A stretch of 63,691 bases of DNA, filler included, from Guillardia theta CCMP2712 (lineage: Eukaryota > Protista > Cryptophyta), in assembly GCF_000315625.1 (NCBI RefSeq). It is 5 parts of 4 records of this genome, joined end to end, with 100 filler letters (N's around TTAATTAATTAA, not from the genome) between each part and the next. Parts side by side here need not be neighbours in the genome. Positions count along the whole stretch, not along the records: positions 1 to 24,399 come from NW_005434622.1; 4 more parts are not named here. The stretch is one strand, 5' to 3'. Under the pieces are notes generated by a model. It saw only the letters and a program-made list of their open reading frames with translations. It searched no databases and was not told the origin of the DNA. Positions 5,891 to 9,233 of the stretch are shown one piece after another (position 1 is the first letter of the stretch; every line of letters begins with the position of its first letter). The translations under genes and the position numbers were made by a program.

Positions 5891-8800
5891 GTCGGCATGC
5901 AGGATTATCTTCACAAGCGGTTTTCTGCTCTCGTCGAGCCTTTCTTCAACGCCCATGGATGGACAAGCAGCGTCGGCGCTGGCCCTGAGCCCCTGGTGGT
6001 CAGGTTAACAAGAGGAGTCCAGGACAAGTACATCCGCCTCGTGAGCATCATCGACCTGGAGGAGGTTGGAGGAGGACGACAAGGAGGAGGAGGAGGAGGA
6101 GGAGATCCGCTGCTGCAGCGTCTCTTGTGCTTCCAAGACGACTTGTGGCCCGACGATCAGCTCTACCTTGAGTTGAAGACGTCAGAGACGTGGAGAGATC
6201 GATCGAGGGAGGACGTCATCCATGGCCGAGCCAGAAATGTGGTTGCGGCAATTCCGAGAGCTATCGAGAAGAGAGAATCAAGTTTGTCAGCCACGTCTGA
6301 TGCAGCGATCTTGTTTGACGGAGCACAAGCTTCACAGCAACTGATGCAGATGATACGTGCCGTGCTAGACGACAATCGAGAGAGACTCTTGAAGCGAAAC
6401 AGGTGAGCCAGAGCCTTACTACAGCTCTTGATCGATGAGGTGAAAATTGTGTTTGTGCAGCGCGCTGTCAAGTCAGACGGGCTATCCCTACCAGAGCTCT
6501 GGGAGTTTCTACGAGTCAGAGATGGTCTTCTTGGAGCATGCTCGCGTGTTCGGCTTATGCATGGGGCTGAGTGAGTACGACGGGGAGTTTCAACCGCTTG
6601 CTGCGGCTGAGAAGGATGCGATGAAATTACATCAAACCCTTTGCTCGTTTAAAAATTGCCATTCTGCTTTATGCTCGAATCCAAGAACCCTTGAAGATAT
6701 GAAGGGGTTCCTGAGGTCAAACCTAACAAGCTTAGAGGAAGCTTGTCCAGAGCAGGTGTTGTTTTTCTTCGCGGGTCATGCAATCTTTGAACCCACCTGC
6801 AAGGATCAGCTTCTGGTTCCGACTGCGCTTGAGGCAGTGAGAAGCTTGTCTTCAACGCAGTTGCTCGAAAGCATGCTTTCGATCACAGAGCTCTTCAGAC
6901 AATTCAGAGACTTTGAAAGGAATGTTGCGCTTGGTACTCCGAGAGTTCTTGTCATCGTGGACGCTTGCAGAGAAAAAGTTGAGTGCAAGAAAGAGAACCT
7001 CCGAGCGGAATCTGATTTTCAAGGAATGCCGACCTTCTGGACTCTCGTACAGACGTGCAGTAATGGGCAGGTTGCATTTGATGACTCTGCTTTCTTTCAA
7101 GCGTTTCTTGACCCTTGCGAGGGGATGTTCGCTTGTAATCAATCTCTCCAACGTGCTTTGCTTCAGTGCTGCTCTTCCACGAACACGAATAATCCAAAGT
7201 GTGTTTTGACGAATGTTCAGAACATACCTGAAGACTTCTGTGTGATTAGCGACGGCAAAGACCTGAGAGTTGTCATGAGCAGTGTGATTGAAACACAAAA
7301 AGCAGCAAGGTACGTGACATCAAATGCATCATGGCGCACAGACGCCTCAGGCGCAGACACTTGCGTGCTTGCTTACAGCGCTCAAGATTCAGTTTTGATC
7401 AGACAAAGAGCAAGTCAAGCGTTGAAACATTTTGTGTCGAAGAAGGAGCAAGACATTCCACGCTGGAGCTTCTGCTCTATGGTCATCATGTTGTTCTTGC
7501 AGTATGACGATACGAGGTTCTCCAGCAAGACCATGTTGGGACATTTGCTGGCAAAAGTGAAGAATGGCAACGTAGGGCCTGAGCTCTGTGAGGACATACA
7601 AGAGTACTTGAGACATGGCAGGATCACTTCGCCGTCCTTTGAGGCTTGGAAGGAGCAGTCGGGTCTGAATTTCCAGGATAACAAGTTGTTGATTGCAATC
7701 TTGGATTTCACGGTAACAAAGGAGATACGCAAGGTGATGCCCGACCCTCAGGAACAAAGAGATGCTTTGTTGATATGGGAGATCCGAGTAGTCAAATGCT
7801 ACAAGTCGTCGACATCATGGGAGAAGGGGATGGACTTGATCGAAGAACATCTAAGACATGTAACTGTCATCGATGACGGGGAGGACAACTTGTTCTACTG
7901 TCAAGTGCTGGAGAAAGCTGCGGATGCTGGAAGCTTCGCCATGATCTTAAAGATGACTAAACTGAGTAGCGTGTTCTTGAGTTGCTGCTTGCTAGAATAC
8001 AACATGCAACACAACGTCAGCGAGCTTGATGGCTTGAGTGCATGGGTCAGCAGCACTGGCTGGATCGTTAGGGAGGACGGATATAACACGGACTGGACTG
8101 TTTCCAATGCGCTCTGGAGCAATGAGCTTACGAGAACCTTCCAAACGCTGGAGCGATGCGAAGTTGGGATGGGCCCTAGGAGCGACCAGACTTCCTTGCA
8201 ACAAGGTGACGCTTGTTGCAATGACGCCAGACCAAAGACTCCTGATCGCTATGCAGATCCTCACAACCAAGAGCAGAGGGCGAGGACCAACTCCTCAGCT
8301 TTCTATCAGTCTCCAAGTCGACAGGTACCGTACATGCAACATGATTCTGATTGAAACAGATTACCGTCTGATCTGAAATAGCAGAACAACGTAGACCGAT
8401 TGGATGAAATTACAATAGACGAAATGGCAGCAAGAACGGTAACAATGACCTTGGAACCTAACGCAAATACGCAACAACAATCACAGTCACCTTCACAAAC
8501 CTCCACTTCTCATTCAAGTGTGTCAAATATGACAGCAAACCAAAGCGGATGGCTCGACAACGCCAAAGGTCATCTGATCAACATGTGCAAGCGGCTCTTA
8601 CTCTCCGAGCCATCCTTCTCCACCAGCCGGGTCGGAGGGCCCGACCACATGCCGACGTTCTGCTGCACGGTGACGGCAGGGGGCAGAAGCTTCCGAGGCT
8701 CGAACCAGACGACGACGAGGGCAGCGGAGAGAGACGCGAGCCGGAGGGCGATAGAGGGGTTGCTGGAGAGAGGCAGCGGGGGGGCGGGCATGGGGGAAAC

Positions 8801-9233
8801 GTGGCAGGCAGCTGCAGCAGGGGCGGGGACGGAGGCGGGGGCGGGGGCGGGGGCAGGCAGGGGCCTTGACAGGCGGGAAGAGACGGCGGCTGAGGACGGA
8901 GGGAGGGCGGCGGGCGAGGGATGGCGTGTAGACGAGCTCAGAGACGCCAAAGGTCATCTGATCAGCATATGCAGGCGGCTCTTACTCTCCGAGCCATCCT
9001 TCTCCACCAGCCGGGTCGGAGGGCCCGACCACATGCCGACGTTCTGCTGCACGGTGACGGCAGGGGGCAGAAGCTTCCGAGGCTCGACGCAGACGACGAC
9101 GAGGGCGGCGGAGAGAGACGCGAGCCGGAGGGCGATAGAGGGGTTGCTGGAGAGAGGCAGTGGGGAGGCGGGTGAGGGGGCAGGGAGTGCAGTTGCTGTA
9201 GGAAGTCTTCGGGTTCAACGCGTGGGGGTTTAA
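5891..9233 (+). CDS. Caspase-like (peptidase C14) protein with two C-terminal dsRNA-binding domains; 3 predicted exons, 5' end unresolved
   Basis: Exons 5891-6402, 6461-8324 and 8382-9233 join in frame through GT-AG introns 6403-6460 and 8325-8381 (or 8384). C14 motifs are VFGLCMGLSEY, AEKDA, LFFFAGHA (His codon 6777-6779), LVIVDACR (Cys codon 6966-6968) and GQVAFDDSAFFQAFL. The dsRBDs lie at about 8562-8762 and 8946-9146. Confidence 0.8.

What the first reader, a model, noticed from the sequence alone, without database searches (positions are those of the whole stretch)
5891..9233. Candidate natural dsRNA-activated caspase: peptidase C14 domain fused to tandem dsRBDs
Seen in sequence: a C14 domain with an intact catalytic dyad (FAGHA, DACR). 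The ORF track splits it from the downstream dsRBD ORF, but a phase-0 intron (CAG|gtaccg 8325 ... aaatag| 8381, 57 nt, typical size for this window) removes the stop and joins the two in frame. A 58-nt intron (6403-6460) adds the upstream exon. Established: dsRBD pairs cluster effector domains on dsRNA (PKR), caspase-family proteases are often activated by induced proximity, and the engineered DRACO concept couples the two artificially. Inference: this may be a single-chain antiviral sensor-effector triggering proteolysis or cell death in an alga. I know of no characterised natural protein with this architecture.
Basis: partly seen in the sequence, partly recalled or inferred. Interest (0 to 1): 0.92.

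Follow-up and report, generated by a model that had tools for sequence, protein, structure and literature searches.

The report
Algal caspase-like protease fused to dsRBDs
In the alga Guillardia theta, a caspase-like protease gene very probably continues across a short intron into two double-stranded-RNA-binding domains that the public annotation misses, and it belongs to a family of about 30 genes that join the same protease core to many different tail domains.

Summary
Pfam finds Peptidase_C14 (His 6777, Cys 6966 intact) in ORF 6447-8354 and two dsrm domains in ORF 8400-9233.

The window is Guillardia theta CCMP2712. It also splices at 8325, but to acceptor 8384, not 8381. It then ends before the dsRBDs through a 97-nt frame-shifting intron.

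A relative's contig (83% aa identity) keeps the GT donor and the CAG acceptor. No RNA evidence was obtained for or against the junction.

Two points change the picture:
- About 30 paralogs share the C14 plus an orphan middle domain. Each is followed by a different tail: ART-ankyrin, kinase-ARM, NACHT-WD40, dynamin-like GTPase, GHKL ATPase or GREB1-type helicase.
- The claim that no natural protein has this architecture is wrong. Bivalve 2xDSRM caspases are published, and one has been characterised.

My odds: about 0.75 that this is one fused gene, and about 0.35 that dsRNA activates it by induced proximity. It is a convergent new variant of a known kind.

The parts
5897..6402 (+). Exon 1: N-terminal region (168 codons plus 2 nt), no known domain
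   Evidence: It is the same as the N-terminus of GUITHDRAFT_111492. There is no Pfam hit. The end motif ...KRN|GTGAG is shared with paralogs.
6403..6460 (+). Intron 1, 58 nt, GTGAGC...TGTGCAG, phase 2
   Evidence: The public model uses it. In L001 it is 58 nt and 90% identical.
6461..8324 (+). Exon 2: C14 protease, middle domain and low-complexity tail
   Evidence: It is an open frame, 97-100% identical to P0001. Window vs L001 substitutions by codon position are 51/46/82.
6528..7256 (+). Caspase-fold (Peptidase_C14) domain; His codon 6777-6779, Cys codon 6966-6968
   Evidence: Pfam PF00656 scores 33.6 bits. The AF2 model has pLDDT mostly above 90 here. The best Foldseek hits are MALT1 and caspase-1/-9/-3/-7/-8, E down to 9e-9.
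7233..8177 (+). Family-specific middle domain (about 315 aa), alpha/beta core with an inserted helical bundle, no known relative
   Evidence: It is conserved in about 30 paralogs and in Hanusia phi. There is no Pfam hit. The AF2 model has pTM 0.81. No fold match is clear, with best Z 5.7. The Atlas search was blank.
8325..8384 (+).
Evidence: The public model joins SRQ|NNVDRL.
8385..9233 (+). Exon 3: linker, dsRBD1, Gly/Ala-rich linker, dsRBD2, C-terminal tail, stop 9231-9233
   Evidence: It is an open frame. L001 has the same linker without indels and the same tail SLRVQRVGV*.
8562..8759 (+). dsRBD 1
   Evidence: PF00035 in the own-genome search, 31.9 bits (C52:292197-292394). Pfam agrees.
8946..9143 (+). 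dsRBD 2
   Evidence: PF00035 at residues 183-248 of the ORF that starts at 8400. The own-genome search gives 35.6 bits. The closest solved relatives are Arabidopsis DRB4, DRB3 and DRB2.
3510..5031 (+). Neighbouring upstream gene with three dsRBDs, the likely donor or gene-conversion partner of the fused dsRBDs
   Evidence: The repeat families D2/D3 link it to the fused copies; copy 4740-4891 is 93% identical to 8546-8697. Pfam dsrm hits. The two dsRBD subtypes are shown.

Best explanation
The locus is one nuclear gene of Guillardia theta with three exons (5897-6402, 6461-8324, 8385-9233), encoding a protein of about 1072 aa. In order, the protein has an N-terminal region of unknown function, a caspase-fold C14 protease with an intact His/Cys dyad, a family-specific middle domain of about 315 aa, a low-complexity linker, and two plant-DRB-like dsRNA-binding domains.

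It is the only dsRBD-bearing member of a cryptophyte-specific family of about 30 paralogs. In that family the same protease plus middle-domain core is joined to interchangeable C-terminal modules. The dsRBD exon was most likely captured from, and is still exchanging sequence with, the three-dsRBD gene about 0.9 kb upstream.

Inferred mechanism: the dsRBDs dock several molecules side by side on long dsRNA. The protease domains then pair through their last beta-strand, as in caspases and MALT1, and become active. They cleave unknown targets in a defence or cell-death response.

The domains, the dyad, the fold and the family are shown. The splice is supported only indirectly. RNA binding, activation and biological role are inferred.
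For: Domains and dyad:
-.

The gene continues past 8354:
- The public model GUITHDRAFT_111492 splices from 8324 into the next ORF.
- The relative L001 (83% aa identity) keeps the GT donor and the CAG acceptor.
- In L001 the two ORFs are in different frames. Only splicing at the homologous sites joins them.
- The 5-nt length difference lies inside the intron.
- Only 66 nt separate the stop at 8354 from the first downstream ATG at 8421.

The gene reaches the dsRBDs:
- The GT donor of the public model's last, frame-shifting intron (8439) is absent in L001.
- The 161-nt linker has no indel, while 600 nt of 3' flank aligns with 394 gap columns.
- The C-terminal tail is conserved.

Family layout:
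- The own genome gives 33 matches to the core.
- Each paralog examined has a large same-strand ORF just downstream with a different domain set.
- One paralog carries a CHAT-like protease, the middle domain, NACHT and WD40 in a single uninterrupted 1695-aa ORF.
- Annotated proteins of 2974 and 3011 aa carry the C14 core plus a cpSF2-GREB1 helicase.

Mechanism:
- The best fold matches are MALT1 and caspases.
- The homodimer model scores 0.53 against a best control of 0.12.
- That mark was reached by 21 of 30 proteins solved as pairs of one chain and by 0 of 23 solved as single chains.
- On eukaryotes it was reached by 17 of 29 and 0 of 30, but by only 1 of the 7 with no older solved relative.
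- The runs agree in at least 54% of their contacts, and the partner's pLDDT is at least 78.
- The interface is symmetric at residues 247-254, the last strand.
- The dsRBDs keep GPDH and T-R-A-A-E. That aligns with TLKSAE in DRB4 dsRBD1, which from my own knowledge binds dsRNA.
Against: - No transcript evidence exists. The RNA run gave 2 reads in the gene and none at a junction.
- No transcript-derived protein spans the junction.
- The spliced junction is absent from metagenome contigs.
- Splicing at homologous sites keeps the frame automatically, so the comparison does not by itself separate an intron from a short intergenic spacer.
- The linker shows no third-position excess (7/10/10 substitutions). 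dN/dS is 0.4-0.9 across the gene.
- A dsRBD-only gene exists next door, so a second dsRBD-only gene is conceivable.
- The first Lys of the KKxAK motif is Thr, so RNA binding could be weak.
- The dimer pass may reflect the model's memory of solved caspase dimers.
Confidence: 0.5

Rival explanations
1. The gene is fused, but the dsRBDs do not act as a dsRNA-triggered clustering device. They may recruit the protease to an RNA-silencing or RNP complex, as plant DRB proteins partner Dicer-like enzymes. They may localise it to structured RNA. Or the protease may cleave the tail off in cis.
For: - The closest solved relatives of the dsRBDs are Arabidopsis DRB4, DRB3 and DRB2. These are Dicer partners (my own knowledge).
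- The KKxAK motif is only partly kept.
- Many paralog tails are enzymes (ART, kinase, GTPase, GHKL ATPase) rather than obvious sensors.
- The one characterised bivalve 2xDSRM caspase was reported to bind PAMPs and bacteria and to restrain GSDME cleavage, not to be dsRNA-activated.
Against: - Tandem dsRBDs with GPxH intact are typical RNA binders.
- The protease fold and the predicted dimer fit proximity activation.
- Other paralog tails are classic sensor scaffolds: NACHT-WD40, ankyrin, ARM and an SF2 helicase.
Confidence: 0.2
2. These are two separate genes. A C14 gene ends at the TGA at 8352-8354. An independent two-dsRBD gene starts at ATG 8421, as a tandem duplicate of the upstream dsRBD gene.
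For: - There is no RNA support for the splice.
- A dsRBD-only gene lies upstream, with copies 88-93% identical to the downstream ones.
- The Hanusia phi transcript-derived relatives are about 600 aa long, with little after the middle domain.
Against: - Only 66 nt would have to hold a 3' UTR, a promoter and a 5' UTR.
- GT and CAG are conserved in L001.
- The public model splices here.
- The closest paralogs (C64, C97) have an intron after the same Gln codon (CAG|GT), followed by long coding exons.
- This is the only place in the 87-Mb genome where C14 and dsrm are adjacent.
Confidence: 0.15
3. The public model is right. The mRNA splices 8439-8535 (97 nt, frame-shifting) and the protein ends at 804 aa without dsRBDs, which would then lie in the 3' UTR.
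For: - It is the deposited annotation.
- GT at 8439 and AG at 8535 exist in the window.
Against: - In L001 the donor GT is replaced (ACC GCA).
- The model would leave two intact, conserved dsRBD reading frames and a conserved C-terminal tail untranslated.
- The skipped stretch has no stop and no indel in either genome.
Confidence: 0.07
4. This is a decaying or non-functional paralog. A recent duplicate in a fast-evolving array happens to keep open frames.
For: - dN/dS is 0.4-0.9.
- RNA signal is almost absent.
- Some paralogs have lost the dyad.
Against: - All three exons are open and the dyad is intact in two genomes whose synonymous sites differ at about 15% (pS).
- Exon 2 shows a third-position excess of substitutions.
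Confidence: 0.05

Closest known systems
Bivalve 2xDSRM-CASc caspases (Crassostrea gigas Cg3C-like A/B; CgCas1-2D). PMC7836458, PMC12122919.
   Same: A caspase-fold protease and two tandem dsRBDs sit in one polypeptide. The authors proposed that it detects intracellular pathogen nucleic acid.
   Different: - The bivalve proteins are true animal caspases (QACRG/QSCRG, p20/p10) with the dsRBDs as an N-terminal prodomain, about 425 aa in all.
- The algal protein has DACRE, a 315-aa orphan middle domain and C-terminal dsRBDs, and is about 1072 aa.
- This is independent, convergent domain shuffling.
- dsRNA-triggered activation has not been shown for either.
PKR (EIF2AK2), and the engineered DRACO concept
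   Same: Tandem dsRBDs are linked to an effector that is active as a dimer. The logic is that long dsRNA brings effector domains together.
   Different: In PKR the effector is a kinase. DRACO is synthetic and recruits procaspases through Apaf-1 or a death effector domain. No homology exists beyond the dsRBD. The comparison rests on my own knowledge of these systems.
Multidomain prokaryotic orthocaspases and eukaryotic 'metacaspase-like' p20-only proteases (PMC5756287, PMC3734836)
   Same: The C14 domain is of the p20 type, sits N-terminally, and is followed by variable extra domains (WD40, NACHT and others in cyanobacteria). The distant sequence relatives share the SDG...SPF...ALLD...G.F motif.
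   Different: Those reviews state that algal metacaspase-like proteases consist of the p20 domain only. This family contradicts that. No dsRBD is reported among orthocaspase partner domains in the papers read.
MALT1 paracaspase and initiator caspases (caspase-9, -8, -1)
   Same: They are the best structural matches: Foldseek E 9e-9, and TM-score 0.71 by target for 3v4o_A. The predicted symmetric dimer forms through the last strand. Activation by dimerisation is established for these enzymes.
   Different: Sequence identity is 12-15%. There are no death-fold or Ig domains. Substrate specificity is unknown.
NLR/STAND-type innate immune receptors with swapped modules
   Same: It is a lineage-specific expanded family with tandem arrays (contig C97). 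A constant core carries variable repeat or nucleic-acid-binding tails. One paralog carries NACHT-WD40.
   Different: The constant core is a protease plus an orphan domain, not an NTPase. The gene studied here has no NACHT domain.

Membership tests
Peptidase C14 (clan CD caspase-like proteases) | Match to PF00656 above the gathering score | tested here: met
   33.6 bits against 21.4, E 4.2e-8. The own-genome search gives 35.4 bits.
Peptidase C14 (clan CD caspase-like proteases) | Catalytic His and Cys in the conserved motifs | tested here: met
   FAGHA (His codon 6777) and DACRE (Cys codon 6966). They align with xAGHG / DxCR in 30 or more relatives.
Peptidase C14 (clan CD caspase-like proteases) | Caspase-hemoglobinase fold | tested here: met
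   The AF2 model has pLDDT above 90 over most of residues 30-170. 218 PDB matches have E <= 0.001; the 50 listed are all MALT1 or caspases.
Metacaspases type I/II/III | p10 domain with a calcium-binding loop; prodomain or long linker | tested here: inconclusive
   Pfam covers profile positions 5-190 of 233 only. The best fold matches are paracaspase and caspases, not metacaspases. No p10 or calcium-site analysis was possible.
dsRBD (PF00035) | Match above the gathering score, in two copies | tested here: met
   61.8 bits for two stretches. Individually 31.9 and 35.6 bits against 23.
dsRBD (PF00035) | RNA-contact motifs: GPxH loop and KKxAK at helix 2 | tested here: inconclusive
   GPDH is present. 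KKxAK reads T-R-A-A-E, which aligns with TLKSAE of DRB4 dsRBD1 and TKKQAE of DRB3. No fold model of this part was made.
Animal 2xDSRM caspases (bivalves) | True caspase (QACxG pentapeptide, p20/p10) with N-terminal dsRBDs | tested here: not met
   The motif is DACRE and the dsRBDs are C-terminal. The resemblance is in architecture only; the algal protein is not a member.
dsRNA-proximity-activated effectors (PKR-like logic) | The effector domain is active as a dimer | tested here: inconclusive
   The homodimer model scores 0.53 against a best control of 0.12. The mark was reached by 21 of 30 homodimers and 0 of 23 monomers in calibration. The pass may come from memory of solved caspase dimers.
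dsRNA-proximity-activated effectors (PKR-like logic) | Activity depends on dsRNA binding | not testable with these tools
   This needs a recombinant protein assay.
Single transcription unit (fusion gene) | mRNA spanning 8324|8385 and continuing through 8439-8535 | tested here: inconclusive
   The RNA run gave 2 reads and no junction. The protein and contig searches were blank.

The most novel reading that the evidence does not exclude
The C14 plus middle-domain core defines a cryptophyte innate-immune receptor repertoire in which a caspase-like protease is the shared executioner and the swapped C-terminal module is the sensor. The dsRBD member would then be a natural single-chain dsRNA-activated death protease. 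It would have evolved independently of the bivalve DSRM caspases and of PKR, as a natural counterpart of the engineered DRACO idea in a unicellular alga.
Probability: 0.3. Interest if true: 0.8.

Novelty: new variant of a known kind. Interest (0 to 1): 0.6.

Why it matters
If the fusion is real, three things follow.

- A second, independent lineage has joined a caspase-fold protease to tandem dsRBDs. That argues the combination is a recurrent solution for linking dsRNA to proteolysis.
- It corrects the statement in reviews that algal metacaspase-like proteases are p20-only.
- It brings out a family of about 30 members that looks like a modular defence repertoire in a protist group whose antiviral immunity is essentially unknown. 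The family has tandem arrays, an orphan middle domain, and tails that range from NACHT-WD40 to ADP-ribosyltransferase and GREB1-type helicase.

The public annotation misses the dsRBDs, so domain-architecture databases cannot show this protein.

Tried and rejected
- RNA evidence. The only RNA run offered (X5, raw reads, about 6% of it read) laid 2 reads at 95-99% identity inside exon 2 and none at a junction. Runs X1-X3 are genomic contigs that run straight through both introns. This neither supports nor refutes the splice.
- Protein database search with the start of exon 3 and with the dsRBD region: both blank. No separate annotated dsRBD protein turned up, and no transcript-derived fragment. 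Low-complexity words may have swamped the second search.
- The spliced junction as a DNA pattern, with either acceptor allowed, in metagenome contigs: no match.
- dN/dS and codon-position counts between the window and L001. They support coding for exon 2 and are uninformative for the linker.
- I first took the frame restoration in L001 (a 55-nt against a 60-nt intron) as strong proof of splicing. I downgraded it, because splicing at homologous sites keeps the frame whatever the spacer length. It does show that the length change falls in non-coding sequence and that the GT and CAG are conserved.
- Middle domain: no Pfam family in any of 28 members, no PDB match by Foldseek, best VIA-align Z 5.7 on ferredoxin-like or RRM-like pieces, Atlas TM below 0.3, and a blank feature search.
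- The public model's extra 51-nt intron (8206-8256) is probably retained coding sequence. It has no stop, L001 differs there by one whole codon, and it does not affect the architecture.
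Full report
WHAT IS THERE

The window is nuclear DNA of the cryptophyte alga Guillardia theta CCMP2712. The translated ORF 6462-8324 is 97% identical over its full length to the deposited protein GUITHDRAFT_111492 (804 aa, Pfam PF00656 only). The own-genome search places the window at contig C52:283636-308090.

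- Peptidase_C14, E 4.2e-8, 33.6 bits against a cut-off of 21.4, in ORF 6447-8354.
- Two dsrm domains, E 9.5e-17, 61.8 bits against a cut-off of 23, in ORF 8400-9233.

The catalytic dyad reads directly from the sequence: FAGHA with the His codon at 6777-6779, and DACRE with the Cys codon at 6966-6968. The two ORFs share a frame. Two stops separate them (8352-8354 and 8379-8381), and both lie inside a GT...AG interval that begins at 8325.

GENE STRUCTURE

Intron 1.

Intron 2. The model also splices out of the C14 ORF at 8324|8325, but it reads SRQ-NNVDRL with one Gln.

The model's other introns. It removes a further in-frame 51 nt (8206-8256). It then removes 97 nt (8439-8535), which shifts the frame and ends the protein 14 codons later, just in front of the first dsRBD. 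This is why public databases show a C14-only protein.

The relative's contig. A 4.4-kb metagenome contig from a related cryptophyte (L001, ENA ERZ930064; 83% aa identity in the C14 ORF) is the best test available.
- It has the same 58-nt first intron.
- It has the same donor, CGACAG|GTAC.
- The interval is 55 nt there, because the window carries an extra GTACC inside it.
- Its two ORFs are in different frames. Only splicing at the homologous sites joins them.
- The GT donor of the model's 97-nt intron is absent (ACC GCA).
- The frame runs on through an identical-length linker into a dsRBD and ends with the same tail, SLRVQRVGV*.

Indel pattern. The 161-nt linker has no indel. Exon 2 has only whole-codon indels. 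Intron 2 has a 5-nt indel. The 600-nt 3' flank aligns with 394 gap columns.

Spliced product. Joining 5897-6402, 6461-8324 and 8385-9233 gives 3219 nt and 1072 aa with a single terminal stop.

LIMITS OF THE STRUCTURAL EVIDENCE

Splicing at homologous positions keeps the frame whatever the spacer length. The comparison therefore cannot by itself separate an intron from a very short intergenic spacer. The linker shows no third-position excess (7/10/10 substitutions).

Direct evidence failed:
- The one RNA run that could be laid gave 2 reads inside exon 2 and none at a junction. The other runs were genomic.
- No transcript-derived protein spans the junction.
- The junction sequence is absent from metagenome contigs.

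Against two separate genes:
- Only 66 nt lie between the stop at 8354 and the first downstream ATG at 8421.
- The splice signals are conserved.
- The public model makes the same choice of donor.
- The family layout, described below, matches.

I put the fusion at about 0.75.

THE FAMILY

The C14 ORF has 33 matches in the G. theta genome, including a tandem array on contig C97. Among 1.84 billion representative proteins only 54 score E <= 0.001. About a dozen of these cover both the C14 domain and the roughly 315 aa that follow it. Those traced are G. theta proteins, Hanusia phi transcripts and unnamed metagenome contigs.

That middle domain is an orphan:
- It has no Pfam family.
- It models with pTM 0.81.
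- It has no convincing fold match in the PDB or the ESM Atlas. The best Z is 5.7, on generic ferredoxin-like pieces.

In every paralog examined, the ORF of about 600 aa that holds the C14 and middle domains is followed within 90-500 nt, on the same strand, by a long ORF with a different content:
- ADP-ribosyltransferase plus ankyrin repeats (C64, C97).
- Protein kinase plus ARM (C51).
- ARM plus RCC1 (C118).
- Dynamin-like GTPase (C97).
- GHKL/SMCHD1-type ATPase (C62).
- Kinase, then Arb2 (C21).
- cpSF2-GREB1 helicase, in deposited single proteins of 2974 and 3011 aa.

One locus (C118:114k) carries a CHAT-like protease, the middle domain, NACHT and WD40 in one uninterrupted 1695-aa ORF. The core and a C-terminal module are therefore covalently linked there without any splicing inference.

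In the closest paralogs the core exon ends with CAG|GTGAG, after a Gln codon as in the window. The next exon begins ...VGSDSLDE, compared with NNVDRLDE here.

Most members keep the dyad and a few have lost it. dsrm occurs at only six loci in the genome, and only here next to a C14 domain.

ORIGIN OF THE dsRBDs

The window holds five dsRBD copies. Three are in a separate gene 0.9 kb upstream (3510-5031) and two are in the fused exon. Copy 4740-4891 is 93% identical in DNA to 8546-8697.

Two subtypes exist, HAPSWRC...YESSE and HMPTFCC...SFRGS. The single dsRBD of the relative L001 is a mosaic of both. This points to exon capture from the neighbouring gene, with continuing gene conversion. The window's second dsRBD is a recent in-frame tandem duplication that L001 lacks.

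HOW IT PROBABLY WORKS

Shown:
- The protease domain has the caspase fold. Its nearest solved structures are MALT1 paracaspase and caspase-1, -9, -3, -7 and -8 (E down to 9e-9).
- A two-copy model of residues 23-265 scores 0.53 against a best control of 0.12.
- That mark was reached by 21 of 30 proteins solved as pairs of one chain and by 0 of 23 solved as single chains.
- On eukaryotes it was reached by 17 of 29 and 0 of 30, but by only 1 of the 7 with no older solved relative.
- The runs agree in at least 54% of their contacts, and the partner's pLDDT is at least 78.
- The interface is symmetric, through the last strand (residues 247-254). This is the caspase-type dimer, so the pass may come from memory of solved caspase dimers.
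- The dsRBDs are closest to Arabidopsis DRB4, DRB3 and DRB2. They keep GPDH and a T-R-A-A-E version of KKxAK like that of DRB4 dsRBD1.

Established knowledge:
- MALT1 and initiator caspases are switched on by dimerisation.
- Tandem dsRBDs line proteins up on dsRNA, as in PKR.

Inferred:
- Long dsRNA brings protease domains together and activates them, in a defence or death response.
- The family's repeat, NACHT and helicase tails fit a reading of a shared effector with a variable sensor.
- The enzymatic tails (ART, kinase, GTPase) fit it less well. They leave room for the rival in which the tail is a recruited or released activity.

I put dsRNA-proximity activation at about 0.35.

COMPARISON WITH WHAT IS KNOWN

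- Vogeler et al. 2021 (PMC7836458) described two Pacific-oyster caspases with two DSRM domains in the prodomain. They suggested viral detection as the role.
- A 2025 paper (PMC12122919) characterised CgCas1-2D (2xDSRM-CASc, 425 aa). It binds PAMPs and bacteria and restrains GSDME cleavage.

Those are true animal caspases with N-terminal dsRBDs. The algal protein has a p20-type C14 domain with DACRE, an orphan middle domain and C-terminal dsRBDs. It is a convergent variant, not a member of that group.

The family also contradicts the generalisation that algal metacaspase-like proteases consist of the p20 domain only (PMC5756287, which cites PMC3734836).

VERDICT

- The finding is a new variant of a known kind.
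- The modular protease family is the more interesting part, alongside the fact that the public model hides the dsRBDs.
- Interest is 0.6, held down by the missing transcript evidence and by the bivalve precedent.

Noticed in passing
G000 contigs C97:149-232 kb, C64, C6, C51, C118, C86, C21, C111, C126, C62, C4, C136, C10 (loci L004-L028): About 30 paralogs share a clan-CD protease (C14 or CHAT-like) plus an orphan 315-aa middle domain. Each is followed by a different C-terminal module: ART-ankyrin, kinase-ARM, ARM-RCC1, NACHT-WD40-pentapeptide, dynamin-like GTPase, GHKL/SMCHD1 ATPase, kinase-Arb2 or cpSF2-GREB1 helicase-TAGT. The family looks like a modular defence-type repertoire and seems undescribed.
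   Followed up: partly
window 3510-5031 (+): This is a neighbouring gene with three dsRBDs separated by Gly-rich and GAGGGA-encoded linkers. It contains a 469-nt tandem duplication that is 98% identical (3673-3972 against 4142-4441). The protein search found no annotated protein of 130-415 aa for it.
   Followed up: partly
window 8546-9180 and L001:2460-2660: Two dsRBD sequence subtypes exist (HAPSWRC...YESSE and HMPTFCC...SFRGS). The relative's single fused dsRBD is a mosaic of both. This suggests gene conversion between the fused exon and the neighbouring dsRBD gene.
   Followed up: partly
window 8206-8256 and 8439-8535: The deposited model GUITHDRAFT_111492 removes these two stretches as introns. 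Both are open, and in the relative they are indel-free or differ by one whole codon. The donor of the second is missing in the relative. They are probably annotation errors.
   Followed up: yes
window 5650-5830: A long (GAGGGA)n / (GGGAGA)n purine-rich microsatellite lies directly upstream of the start codon at 5897. Similar repeats encode linkers in the upstream dsRBD gene.
   Followed up: no
window 10604-11184: Two copies of a 279-nt unit, 99% identical, 302 nt apart start to start. Their content was not examined.
   Followed up: no
window 12595-15035 (-): An FtsH-like gene (AAA, AAA_lid_3 and Peptidase_M41 domains) is split into at least two ORFs on the minus strand.
   Followed up: no
window 22150-22698 (+): An ORF with a weak match to the condensin II non-SMC subunit (PF12422, E 4e-7).
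   Followed up: no
P0016 (JGI metagenome protein, 2764 aa): An environmental relative of the C14 domain is fused to LRR, Roc-COR, EF-hand, ankyrin and SPRY domains, giving a ROCO-type architecture with an N-terminal caspase-like protease.
   Followed up: no
L024 (C126), P0009, P0011; L028 (C97:227k): Some family members have lost the catalytic dyad (FLAGRSV / TDTYS; DAGREK). They are likely pseudo-proteases within the family.
   Followed up: no
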